From positions 62,001 to 126,000 of IMG/VR virus record IMGVR_UViG_3300014720_000001: 64,000 nucleotides of DNA; one strand, 5' to 3'. The notes under the pieces were generated by a model. It was not told the DNA's origin and did not search any database. It saw nothing but the letters and a program-made list of their open reading frames with translations. Position 1 is the stretch's first letter. The number at the start of each line of letters is the position of its first letter. A program made the translations under genes and the position numbers. Of this stretch, positions 39,825-57,838 are shown in pieces.

Positions 39825-40006
39825 AGTCTGTCTGCCGTTTTGCTAACAATATCTCGCCCATTCTACTGCGCTTTATTCTATTACAACAGCGCCGCCGGGC
39901 AGAAAACAGTTATTGGCGGGGCAAAATAGTTACCAGAGCGCTGATAGCTAAAAAAACGCTTACGCGTGCGGAGCCGTCGCCTCCGCTGCCTACAAATTAT
40001 TAACGC

Positions 40007-40750: not shown

Positions 40751-40776
40751 TCCGGGCTTTGATAGCTAAACAAAAG

Positions 40777-42928: not shown

Positions 42929-43162
42929 TTAACCATTGCGCACCGCCTGTTCCAGCAGCTCGACACGCCTGTACAGCACGTCGAAAGACTGCGCCCGGAT
43001 TTTGTCCATCTCGACGATCTTTTCCATCAGGTCGAGCAGGCGCAGCTGGGCTTTCTCTAGCTGCGCGACCCGATTACGCAGGTCAACGATCCGTCCCTTG
43101 TCGGTCTGCGGTAGATCGACGGGGAACAGGGACCCAATGTCGGTCTCAAACATCTGACTCAT
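42929..43162 (-). CDS. Small coiled-coil protein
   Basis: 77 aa; downstream of promoter-motif copy 3. Confidence 0.55.
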   Translation of the reverse strand: MSQMFETDIGSLFPVDLPQTDKGRIVDLRNRVAQLEKAQLRLLDLMEKIVEMDKIRAQSFDVLYRRVELLEQAVRNG

Positions 43163-43235
43163 CGGTCATTCTCCTTGGCCGCGCAGAAGCGGCAGAGAGG
43201 GTTCAGAACCACCCAATACACTATGGGCGTCACTG

Positions 43236-43265
43236 AATATGACCGGAATCAGGCTTTTATTTAGC
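43236..43265 (-). promoter_or_regulatory. Phage promoter-like motif, copy 3
   Basis: Minus strand GCTAAATAAA-AGCCTGATTC-CGGTCATATT; overlaps the AK-stop of 43257..44297. Confidence 0.7.
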
Positions 43266-44297
43266 TATCAGCGCATTGGCTAACTTAGCGCCAAATTCCA
43301 TCGCACTGGAGCACTTGCAGTTCCATTTGCGCAGGGATTTGTTAATGCGCGAGTCAGGGTCACTTTTGGTTTTTGCGCCGGTGTTAACACGTTTCATGCC
43401 GCACATCCGGGAGCAAAAAGAGTTCTGGCGCTTGGCTCGTTCGCCCTTGGGTTTACTCTCAGTCACGGGCGCTTTTAAGTTCCCGCCAGTCTCGCGCTCG
43501 TAGCTTTTGCGTCCCTTTTCGTTAAGCCCGCCTTCAGGATTCTTGCCAGCAGAACGTTGCCAAGCCGGAGTGCTGCCTAACTTCTCGCCGCCTACAGAGT
43601 TTGCCGTCCCAAACGCTGCGTTGCCTGTAATATCACCCGATGACGAGATGGCGCCATATGAATTAATCGGGTTGGCATTCGGAGAAGATCCGCCGCCTAC
43701 TGGAGGAAGCTGCCCGGAGGGTGCCGGCGAGCCCATATTCGGAGGCTGCGCGGCGGGGGCTTGCGCTTGACCTTGCGGGGCGGGAGCCTGCATCCCCATC
43801 GGCAGGGGAGTACCAGCGGCAGGCATGGCATAGCGTTTAATGCCGACGTTTGCAGGCTGCATGGCGGCCTCTCGGGCCTCCAGTTCAGCTCTTTCATTCT
43901 CTATGGCCTGCATTATGGGTTGCGACAAGACAGCAGAAAGCTTCGCCATCAGCTTGTTTACACCATAATTTGGCTTTGTTTCTGCATTACACCGCTCGCT
44001 CTTGGTCTTGGTGACTTGGGGTGGATTTTCGCCGGCTACAGTGGGCTTATCACTGTGCGGCTGAGTGATATACACCTCTTTGGTATCCGCTTTCTTGGAG
44101 AATTTCCTGTAAATATCGAGGGCGACAGAGTTTACAGCCGATTGTTTACTATTTGTTTCGGCTTTTTCAGGCTTCTTTTTGTCATATGCGTACATAGGAA
44201 GTTTCTTTTTGGTTGGATACTCGTGTGCCCAGCGTTTAGCAATGTCTGGATGCGCGGCCCAGAGGAACCGACGCTGTTTTTCTGATTGGAATGGCAC
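43257..44297 (-). CDS. Multi-module basic protein with a DUF6321-like C-terminal module
   Basis: N-terminal MPFQSEKQRRFLWAAHP module; C-terminal AWQRSAGKNPEGGLNEKGRKSY...FCSRM...SRINKSLRKWNC (family name recalled from memory). Confidence 0.65.
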   Translation of the reverse strand: MPFQSEKQRRFLWAAHPDIAKRWAHEYPTKKKLPMYAYDKKKPEKAETNSKQSAVNSVALDIYRKFSKKADTKEVYITQPHSDKPTVAGENPPQVTKTKSERCNAETKPNYGVNKLMAKLSAVLSQPIMQAIENERAELEAREAAMQPANVGIKRYAMPAAGTPLPMGMQAPAPQGQAQAPAAQPPNMGSPAPSGQLPPVGGGSSPNANPINSYGAISSSGDITGNAAFGTANSVGGEKLGSTPAWQRSAGKNPEGGLNEKGRKSYERETGGNLKAPVTESKPKGERAKRQNSFCSRMCGMKRVNTGAKTKSDPDSRINKSLRKWNCKCSSAMEFGAKLANALIAK

Positions 44298-44512
44298 GGC
44301 GTAGCTCGAAAGATAGTGAACTCAGCGGGATTTCCGGATAGTTGGGGTTTGAACTAGTCGGAAAAACCTATGAGTTGGTCGGCGCTATGTGTTCCCAAGC
44401 TGAATACGCCTCATTTTGGCAGAAGGGCCGCGAGAAGAAAAGGGCGCATGGGCGTCTGGTACACTGAAATGACGTTGTTAGTGGCTTCGGGCGTTTCGAC
44501 AAGGAGGTCGCC

Positions 44513-44842
44513 ATGAAATCTCTACGGATTCTAGCGTTTAGCCTGCTGTGCGTGATCTGGGCGGGGAAGGTTTGCGCCGATACTGTGCTCATGTTCTCTG
44601 CTGAATGGTGCAAATACTGCCAGACAGCCAAAAAGGATTTACTGGAGCGTAAAGAAGAAGTAGCCGAGTGGAATGTCGCGGTTGTAGATACCGACGAGAG
44701 CCGGGACATGGTGAAAGAATACGGCGTGAAGAGCTTGCCGACGTTTATTTATCTAAATGACGAGGGCAAAGAGGTCGATCGGCTGACGGGCTACAAAGGC
44801 TATCACCGGTTGCGGCGCTGGGTTGAGAAAAACAAGCGCTGA
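44513..44842 (+). CDS. Exported thioredoxin-like protein
   Basis: WCKYC motif; cis-Pro LPTF; signal peptide; AAGGAGG SD. The only convincing plus-strand gene. Confidence 0.85.
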   Translation: MKSLRILAFSLLCVIWAGKVCADTVLMFSAEWCKYCQTAKKDLLERKEEVAEWNVAVVDTDESRDMVKEYGVKSLPTFIYLNDEGKEVDRLTGYKGYHRLRRWVEKNKR

Positions 44843-44847
44843 TAGCT

Positions 44848-44890
44848 AAAAAAAGCGCATGCAGGGTCAGGGTTGAATACCTGCATGCGC
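44848..44890 (-). terminator. Intrinsic terminator between convergent genes
   Basis: 11-bp stem GCGCATGCAGG/CCTGCATGCGC with a T7 tract on the minus strand. Confidence 0.75.
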
Positions 44891-44895
44891 TCCGC

Positions 44896-45120
44896 CTACT
44901 GGGGCGCCGAGAGGGTGGTCCACTCGCCGCTGTAGGTCTGTTCCAACGGATTGACGATCCGTGGCTTCTGCTCAGGGGCGGGGCGTGGAGCCGGGGCGGG
45001 CCCAGTGACGGGCTGTTGCCAGCGCGTCATGAACTCGTCCCAGCCTTTCGGGGCTTGAGCGCTTTCCGAAACCCACCCGATGAGCGCAAGCCCACCAAGG
45101 ACCATGAGAACCGTGGTCAT
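44896..45120 (-). CDS. Small membrane-anchored protein
   Basis: 74 aa; N-terminal hydrophobic segment; downstream of promoter-motif copy 4. Confidence 0.6.
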   Translation of the reverse strand: MTTVLMVLGGLALIGWVSESAQAPKGWDEFMTRWQQPVTGPAPAPRPAPEQKPRIVNPLEQTYSGEWTTLSAPQ

Positions 45121-45186
45121 GCTATTTCCTTTCTATACATCGTGACGGGCAAGACGTAATTTTTGGCTTACGCCTATCCGTCACTA

Positions 45187-45216
45187 AATATGACCGGAAA
45201 TAGCAGGTTATTTAGC
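45187..45216 (-). promoter_or_regulatory. Phage promoter-like motif, copy 4
   Basis: Minus strand GCTAAATAAC-CTGCTATTTC-CGGTCATATT. Confidence 0.7.
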
Positions 45217-45300
45217 GCGCAGCCAGACGATAATGTCAAAGCCCCAGTCGTCGTCTTCGTCGTAGTCGGTAAAGATATTAATGGAGCTGGCGGCGCGCAT
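45208..45300 (-). CDS. 30-aa acidic micro-protein
   Basis: MRAASSINIFTDYDEDDDWGFDIIVWLRAK; GGAGG SD 5 nt upstream; below the ORF-track cutoff. Confidence 0.45.
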   Translation of the reverse strand: MRAASSINIFTDYDEDDDWGFDIIVWLRAK

Positions 45301-45501
45301 ATGTACCTCCCGACGACAGGCGTTGAAAACGTGTCGCAATTATACGATTTTGATAACAAGTCCCCTATTCGGTAAGAAAAAGCGGTTGAATTTCTTACAG
45401 CCAAACAACGTAACATATTGCTACACATAGACTTACGACAAATGCGGAATTCCGGCGCGGCGTAAGTCTTTGTGCAGCAACATGTTACGCCTAATAGCTA
45501 A

Positions 45502-45539
45502 GAAAAAGCGCGGTCAGGGTCCGAAGACCACTGCCGCGC
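45502..45539 (-). terminator. Intrinsic terminator
   Basis: GCGCGG...CCGCGC hairpin followed by TTTTTCTT on the minus strand. Confidence 0.55.
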
Positions 45540-45545
45540 ATAGAG

Positions 45546-45776
45546 TCAGGTGACCGGCTCGAATTTGACGTCGATCACATTGGTGGCGTCGAACCCGTCG
45601 TCCTCCAGAATCGCGCGCTCGCCGGGAATGCACTCGCAGACCCCGATCGACCGCAAACAGTGACAGCAGCGCTCGGTGTCGGCGTCCGGCACCGGCACCA
45701 CGAGCACAACCATCAGATCCCGGTACTGATCGATGTCCACGAGCACTGCCGGGTTGTTGCGAAGTTGACCACTCAT
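45546..45776 (-). CDS. Hypothetical protein
   Basis: Start MSGQLRN with AAGGAGG SD; downstream of promoter-motif copy 5. Confidence 0.6.
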   Translation of the reverse strand: MSGQLRNNPAVLVDIDQYRDLMVVLVVPVPDADTERCCHCLRSIGVCECIPGERAILEDDGFDATNVIDVKFEPVT

Positions 45777-45954
45777 CTCGTCCTCCTTGAAGAGAAATAA
45801 AACTGCCACCGTTCTCGTTGGTGGCCTACGCTTGCAGGTCGTCTGCAAGGCCGTCCTGTTAGCCCCGAACAGGAAACGGGAAGGGATTGCTTAGCGCATA
45901 CGAGAGGACGCTGGATATACCAGCGACGTAGCATGAGCTATAGGTCCCTTACTA

Positions 45955-45984
45955 GATATGCCCGCTTTTTTGGGTTTATTTAGC
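45955..45984 (-). promoter_or_regulatory. Phage promoter-like motif, copy 5
   Basis: Minus strand GCTAAATAAA-CCCAAAAAAG-CGGGCATATC. Confidence 0.7.
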
Positions 45985-46234
45985 CCACAGCAGTGGCGGT
46001 ATTGCTGTTGTGATAGAGTTGTACAAGGTGTTCTTGCAGCTCCATAAACCCGCGACGGTCTCCAGCTTCAAGTGTCGTGTGACACGTCCCTTTGTGGGCG
46101 TGTAGTGCCCGGCTCGCGGGGTAGTTTTCATCTACAAACGCAACTGCCAGCGCAGCGTCACGAATAGGCTGCTGGCAATGATCACAAAGCACACACGACT
46201 GCCGCCGGCCATCAAGTTTTACAATCGCAATCAT
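45980..46234 (-). CDS. Small Cys/His-containing protein
   Basis: Start MIAIVK with AAGGAG SD; CDHC...HKGTCH. Confidence 0.6.
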   Translation of the reverse strand: MIAIVKLDGRRQSCVLCDHCQQPIRDAALAVAFVDENYPASRALHAHKGTCHTTLEAGDRRGFMELQEHLVQLYHNSNTATAVG

Positions 46235-46270
46235 CGCGTTCTCCTTAAAGTGATAGACAGGTACCCACAG

Positions 46271-46300
46271 GATATGCCCGGGTTTTGATAGATATTTAGC
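46271..46300 (-). promoter_or_regulatory. Phage promoter-like motif, copy 6
   Basis: Minus strand GCTAAATATC-TATCAAAACC-CGGGCATATC. Confidence 0.7.
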
Positions 46301-46315
46301 TGGGCTGGAATAGCT

Positions 46316-46350
46316 AAAAAAAAAGCCGGCAGGGGAGCGCACCCCTGCCG
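46316..46350 (-). terminator. Intrinsic terminator downstream of the candidate ncRNA
   Basis: 9-bp stem CGGCAGGGG/CCCCTGCCG followed by T9 on the minus strand. Confidence 0.8.
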
Positions 46351-46411
46351 ACTAATGACGAATTAACGAGTCGCCACCCGTGCCGAAGCGACCAATCGGT
46401 CGCCAAAAGAG

Positions 46412-46761
46412 CGTTAGCACATGGCATGCCTGTAAGGACAGGTATCACTACCCGCCTACGTCCTGCAGCCGTTTGTTAGGTCACAGACAAGCGCGCAGTG
46501 TACGGCCGCGTGCTTTTGTTATTTAAAACTAGTCTGACAGGGCTTTCACCTGCACCGCCCGCTCCCCTAGCCATAATGTAGCGTAGTCGAGCGGAGTCGC
46601 TTGTAGTAGCCACGAGGCCCGGGCGGGGCTGCCCGCTACTACTTAATCTACCCTAACGGTTCCTGCAAAACATTTCACCACGCCTGCTCGTTACAAACGC
46701 GTACGTGCACCTAGAGATAGGTTCATACACACGCTTCTTACAGGCATGCCATGTGCCAACG
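46412..46761 (-). ncRNA. Candidate large structured RNA of unknown family (about 350 nt)
   Basis: Perfect 20-bp inverted repeat 46417-46436 / 46737-46756, extending to 25 bp with one G-U on the minus strand; several internal stems; no ORF; terminator downstream. Confidence 0.6.
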
Positions 46762-46785
46762 TCGGGATTCTAGCGTCCCTGTTGG

Positions 46786-46989
46786 CTATGTCAACGTGTC
46801 GATATAGTGCTGGATGGCACATATCTTTCTCAGCAGCGCCTCTTCGGCCTCGGGGCCAATATCTTGCGCGTCCATGTCGTTCACCAGCCCGACCAGCGAG
46901 TTTTTGATATTTAACAGCCCGCGGCGAAGTTGTTTAACTTCCACCTCAGTTTCTGTCTTATACCTCGTCCCGGCTTTCGTCGTCACCAT
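46786..46989 (-). CDS. Small hypothetical protein
   Basis: Likely start MVTTKAG; helical. Confidence 0.45.
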   Translation of the reverse strand: MVTTKAGTRYKTETEVEVKQLRRGLLNIKNSLVGLVNDMDAQDIGPEAEEALLRKICAIQHYIDTLT

Positions 46990-47239
46990 CGGTTCCAGCG
47001 CCTCCTTCTTGTGTACTACTTCGGTCCACCACTGGTTGTTCCACGTCACTGCTGTCGAACTCGCTGCCATTGGCTTCCTTTTCTAGCACATCAAACGCTA
47101 CGGCTGTGACGCGATCGACAAGCTCGTTCGCAAGCCCGTCGACCGTGCGGCGAAGATAGTTGATCTTTGTCTCCATCTCCGCCAGCTCGTCTCTCGTTTT
47201 AATCAGACTTCTGACCAAGTCAAGCGTGTACTTGCTCAC
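46958..47239 (-). CDS. Small coiled-coil protein
   Basis: 93-aa ORF coupled to the upstream gene. Confidence 0.5.
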   Translation of the reverse strand: MSKYTLDLVRSLIKTRDELAEMETKINYLRRTVDGLANELVDRVTAVAFDVLEKEANGSEFDSSDVEQPVVDRSSTQEGGAGTDGDDESRDEV

Positions 47240-47523
47240 ATTACCATCCTTTCCGGGACCGCGTCCCGCTCCAGCTGCATACGGATCTGGTACATCCGGT
47301 CCAGCAGCAAATCGGCCAGAGTGTTCTCGTGCGTCAGCATCTGCAGAAAATCAAGGATCTCGGGCATCATCACGACGAATGCCAGCGTGGCCTCGTTCAC
47401 CGTGCAGGTGTTACTGAACTCCATCAGCATATCGTCCGTCTTGGGGTCGTTCACCCAACCACGCAGGTGCGCCGGCGTAGCCTGACTACCCAGCGGCTTC
47501 AGCGTCACGTTGAGCATGGTCAC
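47236..47523 (-). CDS. Hypothetical protein
   Basis: 95 aa; AAGGAG SD. Confidence 0.55.
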   Translation of the reverse strand: MTMLNVTLKPLGSQATPAHLRGWVNDPKTDDMLMEFSNTCTVNEATLAFVVMMPEILDFLQMLTHENTLADLLLDRMYQIRMQLERDAVPERMVM

Positions 47524-47535
47524 TCCTTTGTGAAA

Positions 47536-48192
47536 TCACTCAATCGGTCCAATTGCCCGCTGCACGCGAGGGGGCAACACGACATACTTCAGCTTATTGA
47601 TAGCTTTGTAGTCGTAGTCCTTTTTCTTCGTCTCCGAATAGTTCAACAGCCACAGAAAGGGTTGATGAAACCAATTGGGCAGAAAATGCCCGTGCTCGCG
47701 CAACTGCTTGAGATGCGTGAGCAGACCTTCCCTGCCGTCATAATGCCCGGCCCAAACCATCGTGCCGTCTGCCATCGCGTCATACCCGCCGGACGACGTG
47801 CACTGGTGCGCGTTGTCCAGACTGGTCGGCACCCAGTTGTAATACACCTGAATCATATTCACGTTGCGCTTGCCGCCCGTGTACGACTCAGAAGTTAACA
47901 ACAGCCCGGCCGCATGCCACCAGATCTCGTACACGTCGTTGCTCTCGCCGTGCGTCTCGTGGTAGATCTTCTCGAATCCTGCTCGCTCTAGCACTCGCAC
48001 GCACTCGTCGTAGAGCATGTTGAAGTGTGTGTCACCCAACACGGAAAGCGCGTCTTCTTTATCGCGCGACACCTGCTGCATCAAAGCGATGCCCAGTTTC
48101 GTGGCGTGATCTCCGGTTCCAAGAATTTTTTCTGCCTCGGCGAGCGTGTCGCGCTTCAAAAGGCCAAGCGCGTGGTTTTCCAGTGCGTTCAC
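47536..48192 (-). CDS. Hypothetical protein
   Basis: 218-aa ORF; AAGGAG SD. Confidence 0.65.
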   Translation of the reverse strand: MNALENHALGLLKRDTLAEAEKILGTGDHATKLGIALMQQVSRDKEDALSVLGDTHFNMLYDECVRVLERAGFEKIYHETHGESNDVYEIWWHAAGLLLTSESYTGGKRNVNMIQVYYNWVPTSLDNAHQCTSSGGYDAMADGTMVWAGHYDGREGLLTHLKQLREHGHFLPNWFHQPFLWLLNYSETKKKDYDYKAINKLKYVVLPPRVQRAIGPIE

Positions 48193-48195
48193 TTT

Positions 48196-48414
48196 CTACT
48201 CCTTTGTGAAAAGAAACGTATCGTTCACCAATTCAATCTTTGACGGCGTGTTAGAGTTATTAACAAGCCGCGTACTCGGGTCATCAACGATCTGCCCGTT
48301 GATCTTGCACCGACCTGTCACGATCTCACGCCGGATCAACGACTCCGGCATATCCGTCTTTGTCGCCAGCCAGTCCACCAGCGACACACCCACAATTGGT
48401 TCTGCTTCGCTCAT
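48196..48414 (-). CDS. S4-like RNA-binding domain protein
   Basis: LVDWLA...SLIRREIVTGRCKINGQIVDDPSTRL matches the S4 pattern. Confidence 0.6.
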   Translation of the reverse strand: MSEAEPIVGVSLVDWLATKTDMPESLIRREIVTGRCKINGQIVDDPSTRLVNNSNTPSKIELVNDTFLFTKE

Positions 48415-48416
48415 GG

Positions 48417-49031
48417 TTAATCCCAAAGGGCTTGATAGTACTTACCGAACAGAGTCGTCCCACGACGGATACGCTCCTCGTGGGCTTTCAAACCTGCGAT
48501 ATCGACCTTCAAATTGCTGTAGTGCTTTTCAAAGTTATCAATATCGGCTAGCTCTTCACGGCCCGTGTAGAACTGATCTTCACTGTCTGGGTCGTTCAAC
48601 TGCTCAAACGCCCAGATCATTTCACCTAAGATCCAGTTCCACCGTGCCTCGTGGTTCGTGTCGGTCGGATCGTAGCGCTGTTCTTTGGCCGTACGCGGCG
48701 TTGCGGCTGTCGAACGAAGTTCCTCGGGCACGTCTTCGTCATCCGTGAACGGGCTGCCGGGCTGAGTATCCCGCAGCTGCTTAAGCAGCGGCAAGATAAT
48801 CGGCGCGAGCGTACCGTCTACACTCCACGTGTCGTAGTAGTGGATTTTGATAACTTTCTTCTGCGTGCGGAACCGGCCGTGGAACCACTCGCAAAAGTCA
48901 CCCAAACCTTTTTTGTCTAACCACTTACCGATCTGGTCGCAACGGTCTTCCGAGAAACCGACACGTTGCAGCAAATTGGCGATCTGATACGGACCCCACC
49001 ACTTCTTAGGCGGACCGATGTATACCTTCAT
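48417..49031 (-). CDS. Phage hypothetical protein
   Basis: 204 aa; KIHYYDTWSVDGTLAPIILPLLKQL. Confidence 0.65.
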   Translation of the reverse strand: MKVYIGPPKKWWGPYQIANLLQRVGFSEDRCDQIGKWLDKKGLGDFCEWFHGRFRTQKKVIKIHYYDTWSVDGTLAPIILPLLKQLRDTQPGSPFTDDEDVPEELRSTAATPRTAKEQRYDPTDTNHEARWNWILGEMIWAFEQLNDPDSEDQFYTGREELADIDNFEKHYSNLKVDIAGLKAHEERIRRGTTLFGKYYQALWD

Positions 49032-49330
49032 CTTGCACTCCTTGCGGATTTACGAAACCGGGGAAACTGGTGTTTACAATCCGGACACTCCCAGTAACTC
49101 ACTCCGTCGTAATGGTCCGGGTGGGTATATGGAAGCTCGACGCCAACGAGCCGCGAGAACTTATACGGCGGCGAATAAAACGTTTTAATATGCTCAAACA
49201 GTTCGGCGTCGCTTTTGTCTTTGCACCAGTCTTGAGGGCGCAAAGTGTCAAAGATGTTGCCCGCGCACCAGTCGGCTTTGCACGCCGGGCAATGGCCGTG
49301 ATGATCAAGATTTCGGTACTCTTCATCCAT
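49028..49330 (-). CDS. Small Cys-containing protein
   Basis: 100 aa; CPAC and CPDC motifs. Confidence 0.55.
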   Translation of the reverse strand: MDEEYRNLDHHGHCPACKADWCAGNIFDTLRPQDWCKDKSDAELFEHIKTFYSPPYKFSRLVGVELPYTHPDHYDGVSYWECPDCKHQFPRFRKSARSAR

Positions 49331-49571
49331 TTAACACCTCATATGAATCGACCTCCGGCAGCAGCATCAACCGCCGCCCGTTGTCCCAGTTCACGCCGAT
49401 CTGCTGCCATTGCGCCGGCCCAGACAGATTGACGTATGTAATCGTGCCCTCCAACCCGGCCGGCATATCTTCTTCTTTCGGCATGCGGTCGGATTTAGGG
49501 TTTGTCATCTCTTTCGTCAGCCGCACGCGCCGACCCACCAGCGGATGAACTTTTTCGTCAGTCACAATCAC
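49323..49571 (-). CDS. DUF4314-like protein
   Basis: GRRVRL..M..P...GLEGT...IGVNWDNGRRLML...D; GTG start with AAGGAG SD. Confidence 0.6.
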   Translation of the reverse strand: MIVTDEKVHPLVGRRVRLTKEMTNPKSDRMPKEEDMPAGLEGTITYVNLSGPAQWQQIGVNWDNGRRLMLLPEVDSYEVLNG

Positions 49572-49582
49572 GATGCGCTCCT

Positions 49583-49882
49583 TTACTCGGTTTCGCCAAA
49601 GTTGCACAGATCTTCTAACGGCACACGCGCGCCGTAGCCGTTTTCCCGCGTGAGATCTTCGGTGATACCCACGTCGCCAAAGCGCGAGACCATCACGATC
49701 CTGACGCGAGTACCAGCCGGACACATGACCTTATCAAACTGCGGTTCGTTACCAACCCACCGCTGTTTGTAGTGCCACATCTCGACAGGTTTGCGCAGGT
49801 CAGCAAACTTGTACTGCCACGTTTCGGGCTTGTGCGGCACCCAGCCTTGATCCATCGCATGCCCTTCAAGCGTTTCAACCAT
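49583..49882 (-). CDS. Hypothetical protein
   Basis: 99-aa ORF; GGAG SD. Confidence 0.55.
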   Translation of the reverse strand: MVETLEGHAMDQGWVPHKPETWQYKFADLRKPVEMWHYKQRWVGNEPQFDKVMCPAGTRVRIVMVSRFGDVGITEDLTRENGYGARVPLEDLCNFGETE

Positions 49883-49910
49883 GACTGGCTCCTACAGGGT
49901 TTTCATAGCA

Positions 49911-49965
49911 AAAAGAATAGCGACGTGCCGTGCTGGGTTACGGCACACCATAACCCAGCACGGCA
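49911..49965 (-). terminator. Long-stem terminator-like hairpin
   Basis: 15-bp perfect stem 49926-49940 / 49951-49965; T-rich tract downstream on the minus strand. Confidence 0.6.
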
Positions 49966-49985
49966 ACGTCTCACAACATTAGCGC

Positions 49986-50606
49986 CTACTTCTTGATCAC
50001 CGTCGCGCCGTTCCACTTTATTCGCGTATTGCGCAAAACAGTACGCGTAGGAGCCGCCCGCGCAGCCGATCGCCGCTTCTTCGGCTTTCGAATGACGTCA
50101 AAACCGCGCTCTGACGACTCTGCAAAACTTTGCCACCGAGCCGTAACGCGCGACTTTTTCTTCTTATCCTCTGCGCGCTTGCGACTACGAAGAATCGGCG
50201 TCATGGGGTTGAGCTTGTACATATTCGGGGGCAGCGGCCACGGCTTGTTTTTATCGAACATGCCGGCTGCCCGCGATAACGTACTGGGGCAGTGCCATCG
50301 AATCTCGATTTTGTTGACAAAATCCCAGATTTTGATGATGCCTTTCCCCACCTGAAACGAGTAGTTCTTTCCCCAAAACGCTTTCAACGCTAGCGCCAAA
50401 ACACAGTGCTCCGGCGAACCCGGAATCGCGCTGTCGATCATCTTTTGCGTGATGTGGATATACAGCGGATCACGACTTAGAACGACGGTCCAGTCGTGCA
50501 GCGCCGGATAAGACGGCCCACACTGTTTAAACGGATGCTGCGTACCAGCCTTCGGGCGGCCGGCAGATTTCGAATTCTTTTCGATATTGCCTGATTTCCT
50601 CGTCAT
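49986..50606 (-). CDS. Basic hypothetical protein
   Basis: Start MTRKSG; Arg/Lys-rich C-terminus. Confidence 0.55.
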   Translation of the reverse strand: MTRKSGNIEKNSKSAGRPKAGTQHPFKQCGPSYPALHDWTVVLSRDPLYIHITQKMIDSAIPGSPEHCVLALALKAFWGKNYSFQVGKGIIKIWDFVNKIEIRWHCPSTLSRAAGMFDKNKPWPLPPNMYKLNPMTPILRSRKRAEDKKKKSRVTARWQSFAESSERGFDVIRKPKKRRSAARAAPTRTVLRNTRIKWNGATVIKK

Positions 50607-50817
50607 AGAACGATTCCCTTCGTTATGGAACCAACGGAACAACCCGTAACAACGTGTTACAGGCAAGAAGAAAAAACCGGGCTGGGCCATTTACGCCCCG
50701 GCCCATTATCTAAGCCCAGCTGCAGCTGTTCTTAGTACTCCCCCACGCCGAAGATCACGCCACGAGATTCCCCGCAGCGGTAGTCGGAGGCAAGGAGCGC
50801 CCGGTTAAAACAACGTT

Positions 50818-51008
50818 GCGCTCGGGTATGCTAGCCGAGCGCGGGATATAGGACCTCGGGTTCGCGCATACCATTCCACCCGAGTTTGTGTCCTACATCG
50901 GAACGTTGCGTGTTCTAAATGCCGATGCTGGGCACTACTCCAGCAGTTTTGGTCGCGTGCTCGGCATTCACACACGCGACGAGAGAAGGCACGCTAGCTA
51001 GTCGTGCC
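50818..51008 (-). ncRNA. Candidate structured RNA of unknown family
   Basis: Six consecutive stems with two loop-complementarity pairs in an ORF-free interval; strand inferred only from context. Confidence 0.45.
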
Positions 51009-51011
51009 CTC

Positions 51012-51042
51012 AAAGAAGCGCACAGGGGTCGAGCCTGTGCGC
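51012..51042 (-). terminator. Intrinsic terminator
   Basis: 9-bp stem GCGCACAGG/CCTGTGCGC followed by TTCTTT, directly after the stop of 51044..51451. Confidence 0.65.
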
Positions 51043-51043
51043 C

Positions 51044-51451
51044 TCATCGTGTGCAATGGCCAAGCTGGTGATGCACTTTGTAATAGGGCTGGTTGTGTTC
51101 CAGCATTACAATTTCTCGCCGCGCGGCAATTAGCACTGACTTGACCCACTCAGCCGACGGTAGTGTGCTGAATTCCGGCCGCAGATGATCAATTAACATA
51201 TCAATGCGTGCCGTAATTTCAGTGTTAGCGTCGTTGGGTTCTGGCAAGTCGTGGCGAGTAAACGTATTGTCGGATGCCGTAACATACGTTGTTGTCTTTG
51301 TTGGTACACCAGCGGCCGCAAATACGCTAGCTACCGCAGCTTTTCTCAGCGCTGTGTTTTCAGTCTTTAGCTCGTGTAATGCGACGCGTTGCATTGCGAC
51401 GATCAACCCGAGTGACGCTACACCAAACAACCCAAAAACCCAACCCCGCAT
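51044..51451 (-). CDS. Membrane-anchored hypothetical protein
   Basis: 135 aa; N-terminal TM segment. Confidence 0.6.
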   Translation of the reverse strand: MRGWVFGLFGVASLGLIVAMQRVALHELKTENTALRKAAVASVFAAAGVPTKTTTYVTASDNTFTRHDLPEPNDANTEITARIDMLIDHLRPEFSTLPSAEWVKSVLIAARREIVMLEHNQPYYKVHHQLGHCTR

Positions 51452-51486
51452 AAAGAGTCCTTTCTTTTTAAACGTTACATAACCAG

Positions 51487-51838
51487 TGGAGGCGGCGGGA
51501 ATCGAACCCGCGTCCTGTGATGTTTCCGTTCAGACGTCTACGTGTGTATCTGGTGAATTTGGTCTCACCTGAGTGTCACCCTACCAGCGCGGTAACAGTA
51601 CAGGCCAGCCCTGAACGAATTTAACCTGCGTAACAGAGCAATGGGCAGGCGAGTCGGATTTGGCGACCGCTAGACACTCCAACCGACTAGGAGTGGTTCG
51701 CGGGCTGCTGGTTTTACTCAGGCAGCGATGGCAAGAGTGTTGCCTACTAACATTTGATCGAGTTTTAACGTGGCCACCCGATCAACCACGACACGCAATC
51801 ATGAACTTCTACCATCCAGTCGATACCAGTACGCCCCC
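51487..51838 (-). ncRNA. ssrA: tmRNA
   Basis: 5' GGGGGCG pairs with 3' CGCCTCC-A including the G3-U alanine determinant; T-arm GCGGG-TTCGATT-CCCGC; pk1 (CGTGG/CCACG, TTGATCGGG/CTCGATCAA); tag ORF GNTLAIAA-stop at 51718-51744. Confidence 0.95.
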
Positions 51839-51847
51839 GTCAACGCA

Positions 51848-52030
51848 TTACGCCACTGCCTCTTCAGTAACCGGCGTTTCGCGCATTTTAACAAGCGCCT
51901 CCCGCCGATCAACCAGCGGAAGCGTGAAAAGCGCGTTGTACTCTTTCTTAGTGAGTTCCGTGTCACCAAAGAACTTAATTCCGTACATCAGCATGCCGCG
52001 GGAATCAAGCCAGTAACCAGTCGGCGCCAT
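51848..52030 (-). CDS. Small hypothetical protein
   Basis: 60 aa; GGAG SD. Confidence 0.45.
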   Translation of the reverse strand: MAPTGYWLDSRGMLMYGIKFFGDTELTKKEYNALFTLPLVDRREALVKMRETPVTEEAVA

Positions 52031-52112
52031 ACAGACTCCTTTCGTGAAAAGATATCAAAAAGTCTCGCCGCAAGGATGTGGTGATCGCACGTATTGCTAC
52101 GCTCCCACGCAC

Positions 52113-52280
52113 ATTAAGGCTCGTAACTTCCCCTTGCATTTCGCAACGCTGTACACACGCTGCCGAGACAAGAATTAAAAGCGCCCAACTGGGTGCGGTG
52201 ATGACGGCTTACGCGCTTGCCGCGTTGCGTCGCCTACGTTTCAGCCGATTCCCGCGGAGATTAAGGCTCGTAATTTCCCC
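52113..52280. repeat. 21-bp direct repeat, two copies
   Basis: ATTAAGGCTCGTAA(C/T)TTCCCC at 52113-52133 and 52260-52280. Confidence 0.8.
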
Positions 52281-52316
52281 CAGCCGGGCTTTTTGTTGTG
52301 CGGTTTATTGTACAAA

Positions 52317-52390
52317 TAACCCGGGTGGGAGTCGAACCCACAACAAGTAGATCCTAAATCTACCGCCTCTGCCAATTGGGCTACCGAGTT
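52317..52390 (-). tRNA. trnL: tRNA-Leu(TAG), short variable loop
   Basis: AACTCGG/CCGGGTT acceptor stem; GTAGA-TT TAG GA-TCTAC; 5-nt variable loop. Confidence 0.9.
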
Positions 52391-52510
52391 GAACGTGGTT
52401 TATTCCGGTTGCACCACCACAAGGTTTTTTATCACACCGGACCTTTGCCTGCTGTATATCGTAGGGAGCGCAGCAGGCCGCGGATTCCCTTGAACGTGCC
52501 CTTGCGGGCA

Positions 52511-52583
52511 TGACCCCACGGGGATTCGAACCCCGGTAAACGGAACGAAAATCCGTTGTCCTAGACCTCTAGACGATGGGGCC
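52511..52583 (-). tRNA. trnE: tRNA-Glu(TTC)
   Basis: GGCCCCA/TGGGGTC acceptor stem; ACGGA-TT TTC GT-TCCGT. Confidence 0.95.
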
Positions 52584-52590
52584 GCCTCAG

Positions 52591-52902
52591 TTATTTAGCA
52601 GCTTCTTGGCTCCAAAACAACTGGGCGCGTTCAATGGCGGCCAGCATGCGCTTTCGCCCGACCGGGTTGGCCGAATGAATGCGCACCTCGATTGGCGACA
52701 GGCTACCCTTGTAGGCCGCTTCCTCGATGAACTTTGCGACGTCGTAACCCGTGCCGTTCTCTTCTGGGCCAAGATCGTGGTCCAGCGAAATCAGCGTGAT
52801 ACCGCCCACACGCAAAAGCCGAATGGCCGTTTCTGCTGTTTTGACGCAGCAGTCAAAGTCAGCCGGCTTGGGTCGCTCATCATCGAGCCAGAGTTTAACC
52901 AT
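52591..52902 (-). CDS. Cyclic-phosphate-processing receiver-like domain protein
   Basis: LWLDDERP...ISLDHDLG...TGYDVAKFI...IHSANPVG. Confidence 0.75.
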   Translation of the reverse strand: MVKLWLDDERPKPADFDCCVKTAETAIRLLRVGGITLISLDHDLGPEENGTGYDVAKFIEEAAYKGSLSPIEVRIHSANPVGRKRMLAAIERAQLFWSQEAAK

Positions 52903-53035
52903 AGTTAGCGCATTCCTTCTTTTCAAGCGTCCGCTCGGTCTTCCAAAACAAACGTTTTCCGAACTTTTTCATGTGCTTGTTCCAGCCCATGATCTTTGGT
53001 CGCACGTGCAGCAGTCCGCGCTTCTTCGTGGTCAT
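52895..53035 (-). CDS. Small basic protein
   Basis: 46 aa from MTTKKRG; AAGGAG SD. Confidence 0.5.
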   Translation of the reverse strand: MTTKKRGLLHVRPKIMGWNKHMKKFGKRLFWKTERTLEKKECANYG

Positions 53036-53060
53036 GTTGCTCCTTTGATAACAAAACCAA

Positions 53061-53133
<73 letters not shown>

Positions 53134-53198
53134 TCGCGTGGGTGGGGCGCCAAAGGCTTGGGCTACCTCCAGCGCCCCACCGTCAGCGAGTCTACGCT

Positions 53199-53549
53199 TC
53201 AGCGGTAGCGCTTGCACGCATACCACCGGCCATCCCTGCCACGCGCGACCCCTTGGTCTACGACCGCTCTGCCGCTATTGCTGTAGCAACAGTTGCCCAG
53301 CGCCTCGTCAGGCGAACGGCCCATGCCAACACCTTCCAGCCCTGAGTTACCGCCGTGGTGACCCATGCTGCAGCGGCTGGCCTGCAGCTCGGCTACGCCC
53401 TGTGCCGTGGCCGTAGATCCGCTGTAGGCGTACCCAGAATGAGTAGGCGTCGAGACCATTGGTGTCGTGTAGTAGCGACGACGTGGGGCAGCATGCGCAA
53501 CGCTGGCCAGCATCAAAACTGCAACGACACACGTGGAAAAACGGAACAT
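53199..53549 (-). CDS. Secreted minimal CAP/SCP-like protein
   Basis: Signal peptide; MGH...EGVG...C...GVA...WYAC pattern. Confidence 0.5.
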   Translation of the reverse strand: MFRFSTCVVAVLMLASVAHAAPRRRYYTTPMVSTPTHSGYAYSGSTATAQGVAELQASRCSMGHHGGNSGLEGVGMGRSPDEALGNCCYSNSGRAVVDQGVARGRDGRWYACKRYR

Positions 53550-53616
53550 AACGATCCTCCGTGACCCCGCTGCTGGTGTGCGCAGCGTGAAAAGAAACTA
53601 GCCCCACACCGGGCAG

Positions 53617-53690
53617 TAGGCGCAAAGGGACTCGAACCCCTAACCCCCTGCGTGTAAAGCAGGTGCTCTGACCAATTGAGCTATGCGCCT
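53617..53690 (-). tRNA. trnV: tRNA-Val(TAC)
   Basis: AGGCGCA/TGCGCCT acceptor stem; CCTGC-TT TAC AC-GCAGG. Confidence 0.95.
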
Positions 53691-53695
53691 AGGTT

Positions 53696-54081
53696 TTATT
53701 TGTACTTGCCGCGCCACTTGTCGAAGCGCAGCCTGTACCAATTCCACCTGTCGTACACCCGCAACCGCTGCCGGCGGAACCAGCGGCGGAACCGCAACCC
53801 CGGCGTGTTCAGGCCGTTCTCGTTGAGGTACTTCCTGTACGACCACTGAACAGCCTCGTCTGACCCGGCGTCGGTAACCGCGATGTCACACGCATCGCAG
53901 CGCAGGCAGGGCACGCCGTATACCGGCACCTGATGCACTTTGCCGTCAATGCGCATGTCGTACACGTCTTTAAACGTATACGCACGAAACGGCTCGCCAC
54001 ACTGATAACAACAAATCGGCCTGTATACGCAAGCCGGATTTTTTAACAGATTAGGCGACAGAATATTGTTGTCGGTCAACA
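53696..54081 (-). CDS. YgiT/MqsA-type zinc-finger protein (start uncertain)
   Basis: CYQCGE...VPCLRCDAC; Arg-rich C-terminus. Confidence 0.5.
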
Positions 54082-54102
54082 GAAACTCCTTTCTACTGCG
54101 AC

Positions 54103-54175
54103 TAGGACCGGTGGGACTCGAACCCACACTTGAAGGATTTTAAGTCCTTTGCCTCTGCCATTGGGCTACGATCCC
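54103..54175 (-). tRNA. trnL: tRNA-Leu(TAA), short variable loop
   Basis: GGGATCG/CGGTCCT acceptor stem; AAGGA-CT TAA AA-TCCTT; 5-nt variable loop. Confidence 0.92.
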
Positions 54176-54185
54176 CCGATGCTTT

Positions 54186-54557
54186 TCACACCAGCTCGGC
54201 TTTTTTCTCTTCCGGCGCAGGATACTGCTCAGGATGCGCGATGTGCCGAAACCGGGCTTGCCCTGTGCGGCTGTGCATGCCGAGGATATCTCTGCTGACA
54301 ACGGCTTTCTCGAAATACTCAAACGCCCGTTCCACTTTCAAGAAATCGGCGTAAGACACAGATCCGCCGTCGTCGATCTTACGCCGGAGTTCTTGGCCGA
54401 TCTCGATCAGCTTGTTTAAGTCTTCGCCGATACGGCCGTCGTAGTACTCCGCAGAACTCTCGTTTTCATCGTGTCCGTGTGTTCCCATTCCAAGCGTACC
54501 TCTGATTGCCCATTTGGCACCACCACTGCTGCCCGTCGTTCCAATAAACGGGTACAC
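54186..54557 (-). CDS. Hypothetical protein (start may be at about 54488)
   Basis: ORF between tRNAs; overlaps the upstream gene. Confidence 0.45.
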   Translation of the reverse strand: MYPFIGTTGSSGGAKWAIRGTLGMGTHGHDENESSAEYYDGRIGEDLNKLIEIGQELRRKIDDGGSVSYADFLKVERAFEYFEKAVVSRDILGMHSRTGQARFRHIAHPEQYPAPEEKKAELV

Positions 54558-54789
54558 CAGCCGTAGCGGGATTCATCTCGTCGTTCCCGGTCCACATGTA
54601 CCATTGCCCCTGCTCACAGCGCCACCAACGACCTTCGTGATACACCACGTAAGCCTGCTGCTGGGGTTGCTGCATTTGCTGCACACGTGCCTGAACACGA
54701 TCTCGTAGCTGCTCGACGCCCGTTTGAATAACAGGTTGCACGACCGGCGTCAAAATACCAACAAGCAGCGCGATTAGCCAATTCATCAT
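54466..54789 (-). CDS. Small Trp/Gln-rich exported protein
   Basis: MMNWLIALLVGIL signal; two similar YxxGxWW repeats; AAGGAGG SD. Confidence 0.55.
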   Translation of the reverse strand: MMNWLIALLVGILTPVVQPVIQTGVEQLRDRVQARVQQMQQPQQQAYVVYHEGRWWRCEQGQWYMWTGNDEMNPATAGVPVYWNDGQQWWCQMGNQRYAWNGNTRTR

Positions 54790-54826
54790 TTCCTCCTTGA
54801 AAGATGACAATTAAACAATCGACCAC

Positions 54827-54899
54827 TGGGCCCTGTGGGACTCGAACCCACGACCAAAGGATTAAAAGTCCCTTGCTCTACCAACTGAGCTAAAGGCCC
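54827..54899 (-). tRNA. trnK: tRNA-Lys(TTT)
   Basis: GGGCCTT/AGGGCCC acceptor stem; AGGGA-CT TTT AA-TCCTT. Confidence 0.95.
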
Positions 54900-54932
54900 G
54901 ACGCGTTTTTACCGTACGCTAACGGTGACCAT

Positions 54933-55643: not shown

Positions 55644-55827
55644 CTCGCTGACTTTCTCTGATTAAGCACGCGTAAGCAAAACCGCCAAAAAGCGACCAGC
55701 CCACGAATGCGCCTGTAACGTTTACTGCTTCTCCCATCTGGAGCGAGCGTGCAGCCATTAGCCCAATCACTGCACCCAGCACAGTACACGTCACAAGCAA
55801 GAACTCACGCAGAATCGGGTGGCGCAT
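55636..55827 (-). CDS. Small two-TM protein
   Basis: MRHPILREF; AAGGAGG SD; downstream of promoter-motif copy 7. Confidence 0.6.
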   Translation of the reverse strand: MRHPILREFLLVTCTVLGAVIGLMAARSLQMGEAVNVTGAFVGWSLFGGFAYACLIRESQRDE

Positions 55828-55893
55828 GGTATCCTCCTTGCTTTGCCCGACCGTGTGCCAAGATCCGCAAACACGTATTTGCGGGGCACAAGA

Positions 55894-55923
55894 AATATGC
55901 CCGGATATTGCCAAAAATTTAGG
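55894..55923 (-). promoter_or_regulatory. Phage promoter-like motif, copy 7 (variant)
   Basis: Minus strand CCTAAATTTT-TGGCAATATC-CGGGCATATT. Confidence 0.55.
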
Positions 55924-55926
55924 CAA

Positions 55927-57069: not shown

Positions 57070-57077
57070 TTTGGTTC

Positions 57078-57829: not shown

Positions 57830-57838
57830 GGCAGCTCC

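What the first reader, a model, noticed from the sequence alone, without database searches (positions are those of the whole stretch)
46412..46761. Unexplained 350-nt RNA-like element closed by a 25-bp stem
Seen: GCACATGGCATGCCTGTAAG (46417-46436) and its exact reverse complement (46737-46756) extend to 25 bp. The single mismatch is a G-U pair only on the minus strand. The interior on the minus strand has nested long-range pairings (TGCAG/CTGCA, CCG/CGG, TTAGG/CCTAA), an 8-bp GTAGTAGC/GCTACTAC stem, two T-loop-like GGTGAAA motifs and a possible CCGCCC/GGGCGG pseudoknot. There is no ORF, and a strong terminator follows about 60 nt downstream. It lacks the RNase P, SRP, tmRNA and group I/II signature sequences I can recall. 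Inference: a novel large phage ncRNA, possibly excised by RNase III and possibly acting with the phage RNAP or virion.
Basis: partly seen in the sequence, partly recalled or inferred. Interest (0 to 1): 0.8.

Follow-up and report, generated by a model that had tools for sequence, protein, structure and literature searches.

The report
New processed structured phage RNA
A clade of uncultured ~200-kb freshwater jumbo phages carries a previously undescribed non-coding RNA gene: a ~445-nt transcript whose 25-bp terminal stem is removed, leaving a stable, highly folded ~300-nt RNA that appears in many lake and river metatranscriptomes but whose function is still unknown.

Summary
A 25-nt inverted repeat (46412-46436 / 46737-46761, 24 of 25 complementary) is the only long-range repeat of its kind in the 204.6-kb phage genome. 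It belongs to an RNA gene on the minus strand. The gene has the only 11-of-12 sigma-70 consensus promoter in the genome (46794-46767), about 15 helices, two 3' tail hairpins and a strong intrinsic terminator (46355-46316). Ten distinct homologues exist in related jumbo phages. One is divergent, with a 27-bp closing stem of different sequence. Together they give 29 base pairs with compensatory changes, 98.7% pairing, and G-U pairs only on the minus strand. No Rfam family matches, and no copy was found in 50 more distant relatives. Metatranscriptome contigs of 301 and 299 nt (one ending in an Illumina adapter) cover only the interior of the stem. A discrete ~300-nt RNA therefore accumulates, and excision is supported. 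RNase III as the enzyme is an inference. The gene lies in the phage's tRNA/tmRNA neighbourhood and is always preceded by a clade-specific pair of overlapping small genes. The function is unknown. My best guess is a trans-acting structural or scaffold RNA, in the manner of ROOL and GOLLD. I class it as a new RNA family with a narrow distribution.

The parts
46767..46794 (-). Sigma-70-type promoter: -35 TTGACA (46794-46789), 16-nt spacer, -10 TAGAAT (46772-46767). The predicted start is about 46761-46760, at the first base of the closing stem.
   Evidence: 11 of 12 matches; it is the only 11/12 site in the 204.6-kb genome, which has fewer >=10/12 sites (8) than shuffles (11-21). Conserved as TTGAC(A/G/C)...TA(G/C/A)A(A/C)T in the clade alignment. 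No experimental start site.
46316..46761 (-). Predicted primary transcript (~445 nt): closing stem, core, 3' tail and terminator.
   Evidence: Promoter and terminator positions; conserved from end to end in 9 clade sequences.
46737..46761 (-). 5' arm of the 25-bp closing (processing) stem.
   Evidence: 9 pairs covary within the clade. The divergent homologue L129 has a 27-bp stem of different sequence.
46412..46436 (-). 3' arm of the 25-bp closing stem.
46432..46736 (-). Mature stable RNA (~300 nt). The observed contig ends are 46729-46735 on the 5' side and 46432-46434 on the 3' side.
   Evidence: contigs X19 46434-46733 (301 nt, whole record laid), X20 46432-46729 followed by a 22-nt Illumina adapter, and X28 up to 46735. 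None of the stem's 5' arm, only 3-5 nt of its 3' arm, and none of the tail or flanks is in the contigs.
46703..46734 (-). Helix H1: 6 bp plus 5 bp, a UAUGA internal loop and an invariant UCUC end loop.
   Evidence: (helices 1-2).
46679..46701 (-). Helix H2: an 8-bp hairpin with a variable loop.
   Evidence: helix 3: 7 of 8 pairs have changes on both sides. Coordinates.
46652..46673 (-). 5' strand of the long-range helix (AUGUUUUGCAG ... GUUAGG). It lies in a 33-nt block that is invariant in the 7-sequence clade alignment (one G/A difference in two further clade members).
   Evidence: (helices 4-5; compensatory changes in L129).
46458..46480 (-). 3' strand of the long-range helix (CCUAAC ... 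CUGCAGGACGU), closing a five-way junction.
46603..46642 (-). Helix H3 (the GUAGUAGC/GCUACUAC stem with a G+C-rich inner hairpin).
   Evidence: helix 6: 6 pairs with changes on both sides. Coordinates.
46555..46594 (-). Helix H4 with a conserved large end loop. The loop holds a (near-)palindrome: CAUuAUG or CAUAUG in the clade, AAGUACUU in L129.
   Evidence: (helix 8).
46537..46553 (-). Helix H5: hairpin GCAGG-UGAAAG-CCUGY. The loop is the same in 9 of 10 homologues, including the divergent L129 (one G for A in L009).
   Evidence: (helix 11).
46484..46536 (-). Helix H6: a 5-bp base, an A/U-rich segment and a 10-bp hairpin whose CCGUACA loop is invariant within the clade.
   Evidence: helices 12-14: 10 pairs with changes on both sides. 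Coordinates.
46437..46456 (-). Helix H7: an 8-bp hairpin with a GUGA loop, directly before the 3' arm.
   Evidence: (helix 15).
46357..46404 (-). 3' tail with two conserved hairpins. T1 is 46404-46387. T2 is 46375-46357, with a stem that changes GGCGA/UCGCC to GCGGA/UCCGU to GUGGG/CCCAC and an invariant loop CUCGUUAA.
   Evidence: Not seen in the RNA contigs. Only partly conserved in L129.
46316..46355 (-). Intrinsic terminator: a stem of 12-14 bp followed by U9.
   Evidence: The stem covaries (columns 419-452).
46786..47239 (-). Two overlapping small genes directly upstream: gene A (46958-47239, coiled-coil and acidic) and gene B (46786-47070, with the motif NWNNQWW). The last codons of gene B contain the -35 box.
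   Evidence: both lie upstream of the RNA in G004, G008 (L129), L011 and L022 as in the window, and gene A alone was picked up by the motif search in L006 and L009. They are absent from the RNA-less complete genomes G015, G017 and G025. Gene B has only 5 relatives among 1.84 billion representative proteins.

Best explanation
This is a free-standing gene for a new class of structured non-coding RNA in a clade of freshwater jumbo phages. Shown: the element is conserved as an RNA fold on the minus strand, with about 15 helices (94 pairs in the core model) around a long-range helix and a five-way junction. A ~300-nt species corresponding to the interior of the terminal stem exists as a discrete molecule in environmental RNA. 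Inferred from sequence: host RNA polymerase starts at a near-consensus sigma-70 promoter exactly at the base of the stem and stops at an intrinsic terminator, giving a ~445-nt precursor. Inferred: the conserved 25-27-bp perfect duplex formed by the 5' end and a downstream segment is cut by a double-strand-specific endonuclease, most likely host RNase III as for rRNA precursors and T7 early RNAs. This releases the core from the tail and terminator, and the ends are then trimmed back to the folded body. Inferred, and weakest: the mature RNA acts in trans as a structural or scaffold RNA. It may form a small ribonucleoprotein with the two clade-specific proteins encoded just upstream, or act alone. 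It would be made from the start of infection, and it belongs functionally with the phage's other stable RNAs (7 tRNAs and a tmRNA, the nearest 4.7 kb upstream). My confidence is about 0.9 for 'real ncRNA gene', about 0.8 for 'processed to a stable ~300-nt RNA', about 0.5 for RNase III, and about 0.3 for the scaffold/RNP role.
For: Structure: 98.7% of cells are paired. 29 pairs have changes on both sides, against 11.1 +/- 1.9 in shuffles and 3-7 in slid controls. RNAalifold found 28 compensatory pairs among 7 sequences. Strand: G-U pairs occur only on the minus strand, and the core has z -2.0 on minus against -0.1 on plus. Conservation: the RNA is 85-97% identical where the neighbouring 218-aa protein is only 62% identical. 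The divergent homologue L129 keeps the fold with a 27-bp stem of different sequence. Transcription unit. Mature RNA: contigs from four metatranscriptomes lie only within 46432-46735. Two are full-length (301 nt; 299 nt plus adapter) and end there. More than 20 RNA runs from many studies hold part of it. The inverted repeat (25 nt) is shorter than the 31-letter words the assembly index uses, so an assembly break at the repeat is unlikely (my inference). Context: relatives have tRNAs and a tmRNA in the same slot. The gene A/B pair co-occurs with the RNA.
Against: No function-revealing similarity was found. Rfam gives nothing. Neighbouring proteins have no informative family, and the gene B model is of low confidence (pLDDT 68). 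The RNA contigs come from a relative (93% identity), not from this exact genome. Zero depth on the flanks is weak evidence, because that relative's flanks may be too divergent to be laid. The start site, the enzyme and the exact ends are not measured. L129 has no recognisable sigma-70 promoter or intrinsic terminator, so independent transcription may not be universal. The gene A/B pair is one of about 25-30 clade-specific genes, so co-occurrence alone is weak. The distribution is narrow: 0 of 50 other family genomes match, 14 of them at least 90% complete.
Confidence: 0.55

Rival explanations
1. An RNA-only, self-assembling particle. The mature RNA would form homo-oligomers through symmetric kissing loops, as ROOL, GOLLD and OLE do, with no protein partner.
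For: It shares the setting of ROOL and GOLLD: phage-encoded, near tRNA genes, abundant, ornate (PMC12286853, read). The end loop of H4 carries a self-complementary sequence that differs between lineages but stays palindromic: CAUAUG, CAUuAUG with the extra base exactly at the centre, and AAGUACUU in L129. The cited paper uses this kind of signature for intermolecular loops.
Against: Palindromic 6- and 7-mers are common in this RNA (10-16 per sequence, about 9 expected by my estimate). One clade member (L013) loses the palindrome. At 300 nt it is much smaller than ROOL (~600 nt) or GOLLD (~800 nt). No oligomer data exist.
Confidence: 0.15
2. A cis-acting processing or retroregulation site. The stem would be an RNase III site that sets the stability of the upstream (gene A/B) or downstream mRNA, as with the T7 R sites or lambda sib, and the interior would have no function of its own.
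For: A long perfect duplex lies between genes on the coding strand. In L129 there is no clear separate promoter or terminator, so co-transcription with upstream genes is possible.
Against: The 300-nt interior is the best-conserved part. It has 33-nt and 32-nt blocks that are invariant or nearly so across the clade and covarying pairs in 9 of its 15 internal helices. It accumulates as a stable RNA while the stem and tail do not. In the window clade it has its own strong promoter and terminator.
Confidence: 0.07
3. A self-processing ribozyme. The discrete ends would arise by self-cleavage near the top of the stem rather than by a host nuclease.
For: The ends lie at the junction of stem and core rather than inside the duplex. 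The core is large, with invariant unpaired blocks.
Against: No match to any self-cleaving ribozyme family in Rfam. A conserved duplex of 25-27 bp, more than two helical turns, is what RNase III needs (established knowledge) and has no obvious role in a ribozyme. Contig ends are approximate.
Confidence: 0.05
4. A highly diverged copy of a known cellular RNA (RNase P RNA, tmRNA, 6S, SRP) that serves the phage's tRNA/tmRNA set.
For: It lies in the stable-RNA neighbourhood of a phage with 7 tRNAs and a tmRNA. Its size is close to that of RNase P RNA or tmRNA.
Against: cmscan at E<=10 finds none of these in the window copy or in L129. ARAGORN finds nothing there. There is no similarity to the phage's own tmRNA. 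The universal RNase P P4 sequence (GGAAAGUC) is absent from the sequence (read; the motif itself is from my own knowledge). A scan of 185,579 species genomes with a 23-base motif found only a misbinned phage contig.
Confidence: 0.03
5. A DNA-level element: a MITE-like transposon remnant, a recombination site or a replication origin bounded by terminal inverted repeats.
For: 25-nt terminal inverted repeats 300 bp apart.
Against: It is single-copy in the genome and has no target-site duplication. In homologues the repeats change sequence with G-U intermediates that pair on one strand only. Internal helices covary. It sits at the same syntenic place in all genomes. It exists as RNA.
Confidence: 0.02

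Closest known systems
ROOL and GOLLD RNAs (large ornate ncRNAs of phages and prophages; Rfam families)
   Same: Phage-encoded, close to tRNA genes, many-helix conserved fold, high abundance, no associated protein of known function, function unknown (PMC12286853 and PMC5737381).
   Different: No sequence or structure match to either model. It is about half the size or less. It is released from a precursor by a long terminal duplex, which to my knowledge is not described for ROOL or GOLLD. It is confined to one clade of proteobacteria-type freshwater jumbo phages rather than Lactobacillales, mycobacterial or rumen phages.
RNase III processing stems of rRNA precursors and phage T7 early transcripts
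   Same: The 5' and 3' flanks of a stable RNA pair into a duplex of two or more turns that is removed, leaving the folded body. The duplex keeps its length and pairing but not its sequence.
   Different: The released body is not rRNA and the gene is monocistronic. Cleavage by RNase III has not been shown here.
phi29 packaging RNA (pRNA)
   Same: A phage-encoded structured RNA made from a host-type promoter, trimmed to a shorter stable domain, that works as a structural part of a phage machine through loop-loop oligomerisation (established knowledge).
   Different: No similarity (the Rfam scans returned no match of any family here). The phage type is different (a 200-kb myovirus-like jumbo phage, not a phi29-like podovirus). 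The RNA is 300 nt rather than 120 nt. No link to portal or terminase genes was seen.
6S RNA and other protein-sequestering RNAs
   Same: An abundant, stable, trans-acting RNA whose 5' and 3' ends pair.
   Different: 6S is one long interrupted duplex with a central bubble. This RNA is a multi-branched fold whose terminal duplex is removed. There is no Rfam match.

Membership tests
Any Rfam 15 family (including GOLLD, ROOL, OLE, HEARO, raiA, RNase P, tmRNA, 6S, SRP, group I/II introns, self-cleaving ribozymes) | Score at or above the family's gathering threshold against its covariance model. | tested here: not met
   (whole window at gathering thresholds: only the tmRNA and 7 tRNAs elsewhere). 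(46200-46950, E<=10: only a 16-bit chance hit on the terminator). (divergent homologue, E<=10: only a 14-bit chance hit).
Structured ncRNA (generic) | Base pairs maintained by compensatory substitutions, more than in the controls. | tested here: met
   29 pairs and 60 cells with changes on both sides, 0 of 500 shuffles as high, and slid controls 3-7 pairs. The alignment was fitted to the model, which favours the structure. An independent MAFFT/RNAalifold run gave 28 such pairs.
Structured ncRNA (generic) | The molecule exists as RNA with defined ends. | tested here: met
   RNA-library contigs of 301 nt and 299 nt (plus adapter) confined to 46432-46735. They come from a 93%-identical relative. 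Strand and end chemistry are not determined.
RNase III substrate | A near-perfect duplex of about 20 bp or more (two helical turns). | tested here: met
   25 bp in the window clade and 27 bp in L129. Length and pairing are conserved, sequence is not.
RNase III substrate | Staggered cleavage inside the duplex by RNase III. | not testable with these tools
   Contig ends lie at or near the top of the stem, which fits cleavage followed by trimming. The enzyme and the primary cut sites are unknown. The phage has no RNase III gene.
ROOL/GOLLD-like RNA-only assemblies | Homo-oligomerisation through conserved intermolecular contacts. | tested here: inconclusive
   The H4 loop is palindromic in 9 of 10 homologues, with different sequences. 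Palindromes are frequent in this RNA, and there are no physical data.
MITE / DNA transposon remnant | Multiple copies, target-site duplication, and terminal repeats conserved in sequence. | tested here: not met
   Single copy. The flanks differ (AAGAG and TCGGG). The repeats diverge with compensation.
Retron / reverse-transcriptase-associated ncRNA | A reverse transcriptase gene in the element or genome. | tested here: not met
   No RVT_1 match in the complete genome.
Y RNA (Ro60-associated) | A Ro60/TROVE protein encoded by the genome. | tested here: not met
   No TROVE match. No Y RNA family hit.

The most novel reading that the evidence does not exclude
The 300-nt RNA founds a new functional class: a phage-made RNA machine or particle. 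It would be the only strongly host-promoted gene of a phage that otherwise uses its own RNA polymerase. It would be produced in bulk at the onset of infection, cut out of its precursor like an rRNA, and assembled either with itself through the palindromic H4 loop or with the two co-inherited small proteins. It would then act on the host's or the phage's translation or RNA-processing apparatus, alongside the phage's tRNAs and tmRNA.
Probability: 0.2. Interest if true: 0.85.

Novelty: new variant of a known kind. Interest (0 to 1): 0.62.

Why it matters
Large, intricately folded RNAs of unknown function are rare, and each has proved instructive: RNase P, tmRNA, OLE, and the ROOL and GOLLD nanocages. 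This one adds a family from a different virus group, uncultured freshwater jumbo phages that encode their own multisubunit RNA polymerase. It comes with three handles that most orphan RNAs lack. It has a defined precursor-to-product maturation through a conserved duplex. It has direct evidence of a discrete, abundant product in environmental RNA from many sites. It has a tightly linked pair of clade-specific protein genes as candidate partners. At 300 nt it is well suited to chemical probing and cryo-EM. The limits are that the family is so far confined to one narrow clade, the host is uncultured, and nothing yet points to a specific activity.

Tried and rejected
1. Known RNA families: cmscan at gathering thresholds and at E<=10 on the window copy and on the divergent copy found nothing. 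ARAGORN found nothing there.
2. Sequence similarity: blastn against 50,697 phage records gave no match. The exact 20-mer of the stem is not in IMG/VR.
3. Wider homologues:
- Three further invariant-block scans of IMG/VR, one metagenome scan and one scan of 185,579 species genomes returned only the same clade plus chance hits.
- Covariance models R1 and R2 found one divergent copy (G008) and nothing in 49 other family genomes or in three fragmentary distant relatives reached through the 218-aa gene.
- Six loci of relatives reached through the 218-aa neighbour had no match; those slots hold tRNAs and a tmRNA instead.
- A filter-off cmsearch failed internally.
4. Partner enzymes in the genome: no reverse transcriptase, Ro60/TROVE, RtcB or RNase III.
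5. Relation to the phage tmRNA: none. An 11-nt complementarity between the tail and the tmRNA was judged to be chance.
6. Neighbour proteins: PHROGs, Pfam, the ESM Atlas and an exhaustive HMMER search gave no function. The AlphaFold model of gene B has pLDDT 68, so I did not take it to a fold search.
7. A second 12-nt long-range repeat at 39836/40253 lies inside a coding region and was dismissed as chance.
9. Literature: the 'moraphage' lineage paper (PMC12619734) describes a different group that lacks an RNA polymerase.

Full report
**Setting.** The window is bases 62001-126000 of a complete 204,621-bp virus record with direct terminal repeats. It has 55.8% G+C and nearly all genes lie on the minus strand. 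It encodes a multisubunit RNA polymerase: a 1472-aa beta plus beta'-N fusion and a 626-aa beta'-C protein. It also carries a tmRNA and seven tRNAs. The nearest cultured phages share only about 26% identity in beta'-C. Hundreds of uncultured relatives exist, mostly ~200-kb contigs from lake and other freshwater samples.

**The observation.** The inverted repeat is exactly as described: arms 46412-46436 and 46737-46761, 25 nt, one mismatch. It is the only long-range exact inverted repeat of 20 nt in the whole genome, and the element is single-copy. The mismatch is G-U on the minus strand only. The element folds better on the minus strand (z -6.7 against -4.1). For the 300-nt interior alone the contrast is -2.0 against -0.1. 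Thermodynamics is therefore suggestive but not decisive.

**The transcription unit.**
- On the minus strand, TTGACA-16 nt-TAGAAT lies at 46794-46767, which places the start at the first base of the stem.
- In a scan of the whole genome this is the only site matching 11 of 12 consensus positions.
- The genome holds fewer sites at 10/12 or better (8) than shuffled versions (11-21).
- A 12-14-bp G+C-rich hairpin with U9 follows at 46355-46316.
- The promoter hexamers, the terminator and the 95-nt tail between stem and terminator are all conserved in the clade.
- The tail contains two hairpins. One of them changes its stem (GGCGA/UCGCC to GCGGA/UCCGU to GUGGG/CCCAC) while keeping the loop CUCGUUAA.

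**Homologues and structure.**
- Through the neighbouring 218-aa gene and through invariant blocks I found the element in nine distinct sequences from ~200-kb freshwater phage contigs.
- It is 85-97% identical where the neighbouring protein is only 62% identical.
- RNAalifold on seven sequences gave 144 pairs, 28 of them with compensatory changes. These include nine in the closing stem, where several steps go through G-U.
- A covariance model of the 300-nt core (R1) then found a divergent copy in a complete 203-kb genome whose beta'-C is 86% identical (75 bits).
- That copy has a 357-nt core and a 27-bp closing stem of largely different sequence. Its mismatches are again G-U on the same strand.
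- On the ten-sequence alignment, 98.7% of cells pair and 29 pairs carry changes on both sides. Column shuffles give 11.1 +/- 1.9, and slid structures give 3-7.
- The fold, with window coordinates:
  - a closing stem;
  - two 5' hairpins (H1, H2);
  - a long-range helix (46673-46652 with 46480-46458) built from the two most conserved strands;
  - a five-way junction carrying H3-H6;
  - a 3' hairpin (H7).
- One-nucleotide indels break every small ORF.

**Is it known?** No Rfam family matches either copy, even at E<=10. There is no similarity to the phage's tmRNA. The genome has no reverse transcriptase, Ro60, RtcB or RNase III. Pattern scans of IMG/VR, JGI metagenomes and 185,579 species genomes returned only this clade, plus one phage contig binned into a MAG. 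Models R1 and R2 found nothing in 49 further genomes of the same phage family, with beta'-C identity of 42-95% and 14 of the 50 searched at least 90% complete. The family is new and narrow.

**Is it made, and in what form?**
- More than twenty metatranscriptomes from independent studies (aquatic, riverine, freshwater, sediment, aquaculture) hold 7-16% of the element's 31-mers.
- I laid four of them on 45800-47400. Every contig falls within 46432-46735.
- One is 301 nt and is laid over its whole length (46434-46733).
- One is 299 nt (46432-46729) and then runs straight into 22 nt of Illumina adapter. The cDNA molecules therefore ended there, at what is the RNA's 5' side.
- None contains the outer stem or the well-conserved tail.
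- The contigs are 93% identical to the window, so they come from a relative. The empty flanks therefore prove little.
- The contig ends, however, show a discrete ~300-nt RNA equal to the interior of the stem. The 25-nt repeat is shorter than the 31-letter words used, so I do not expect an assembly break there.
- This supports excision. A conserved duplex of more than two turns is the classical RNase III substrate (established knowledge). The enzyme must be the host's, but this step is inferred.

**Context.**
- In more distant relatives, the slot downstream of the 218-aa gene holds tRNA genes and the tmRNA. In the window these lie 4.7-8 kb upstream. The RNA therefore sits in the phage's stable-RNA neighbourhood, as ROOL and GOLLD often do (PMC12286853).
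- Directly upstream lies a pair of overlapping small genes. Both were found in the window, G004, G008, L011 and L022, and gene A also in L006 and L009.
- The pair is absent from three complete RNA-less relatives. Gene B has only five relatives among 1.84 billion representative proteins.
- About 25-30 other genes share this clade-specific pattern, so the link is suggestive only.
- A small S4-like protein gene (Pfam S4, E 0.0027, below the family cut-off) lies 1.5 kb upstream here and directly upstream in G008. S4-domain proteins also occur at the same locus in relatives where no copy of the RNA was found nearby.

**Mechanism.** I commit to the following. Host RNA polymerase makes a ~445-nt precursor. 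A double-strand-specific nuclease, probably RNase III, removes the terminal duplex and with it the tail and terminator. The compact ~300-nt core then accumulates and acts in trans as a structural or scaffold RNA, possibly with proteins A and B. The first two steps are well supported. The last is a reasoned guess. An RNA-only assembly is the main rival. The H4 end loop is self-complementary in nine of ten homologues, with lineage-specific sequences (CAUAUG; CAUuAUG with the insertion at the centre; AAGUACUU). Palindromes are common in this RNA, however, so I treat this only as a lead. A purely cis-acting processing site, a DNA element, a ribozyme and a diverged known RNA are each disfavoured by specific results, given under the rival explanations.

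**Verdict.** This is a genuine, previously undescribed, clade-restricted phage ncRNA with a defined maturation step and evidence of environmental expression. Its function is unknown. Interest is moderate to high for RNA biologists. It is tempered by the narrow distribution and the absence of any clue to activity.

Noticed in passing
window 51484-51838 (-) and 52317-54899 (-), 22108-22181 (-): The phage encodes a full-length tmRNA (145 bits) and seven tRNAs (Leu x2, Glu, Met, Val, Lys, Asn). In distant relatives the tRNA/tmRNA cluster sits immediately downstream of the 218-aa gene, which is the slot the new RNA occupies here.
   Followed up: partly
window 8501-12919 (-) and 5638-7518 (-): Multisubunit RNA polymerase with an unusual split: one 1472-aa protein carries beta domains followed by beta'-N domains, and a 626-aa protein carries beta'-C. 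Some relatives have intein-like insertions (LAGLIDADG or Hint domains) that lengthen the beta'-C protein to ~1010 aa.
   Followed up: partly
window 46786-47239 (-): Two conserved small genes overlap by about 110 nt in different frames. Both reading frames are conserved at the protein level across the clade: ELEQPMV in one frame is encoded by the same bases as NWNNQWW in the other. The last codons of gene B double as the -35 box of the RNA promoter.
   Followed up: partly
window 46310-46318, 44842-44850, 40762-40770, 39944-39952 (-); genome 147698-147706 (-): The 9-mer TTTAGCTAT occurs five times on the coding strand (0.5 expected), each time directly after the T run of a terminator hairpin. 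Twice it is followed 8-10 nt later by AGCTAAATATC. It may be a promoter for the phage's own RNA polymerase, or a terminator-promoter cassette.
   Followed up: partly
whole genome G000: Sigma-70-like promoters are depleted: 8 sites at 10/12 or better on both strands, against 11-21 in shuffles. This fits reliance on the phage polymerase. The RNA gene has the single best site.
   Followed up: partly
window 48196-48426 (-); L129 1992-2183 (-): A small S4-like RNA-binding-domain protein (Pfam S4, E 0.0027, below the cut-off). Its homologue lies directly upstream of the RNA in the divergent genome G008. Longer S4-domain proteins occur at the same locus in relatives where no copy of the RNA was found nearby.
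   Followed up: partly
window 46397-46407 (-) and 51659-51669 (-): An 11-nt perfect complementarity between the RNA's 3' tail (UUUGGCGAC region) and the phage tmRNA (positions 170-180). It was judged likely to be chance (E 0.03 in a two-sequence comparison), and conservation was not examined.
   Followed up: no
genome G000 185899-185947 (outside the window): A perfect 22-bp hairpin with a 5-nt loop, the longest exact inverted repeat in the genome. Not examined.
   Followed up: no
window 43000-58000: The 15 kb around the RNA is a fast-evolving island of small hypothetical genes. Many have no tblastn match at E<=1e-4 in genomes whose polymerase is 72-90% identical.
   Followed up: partly
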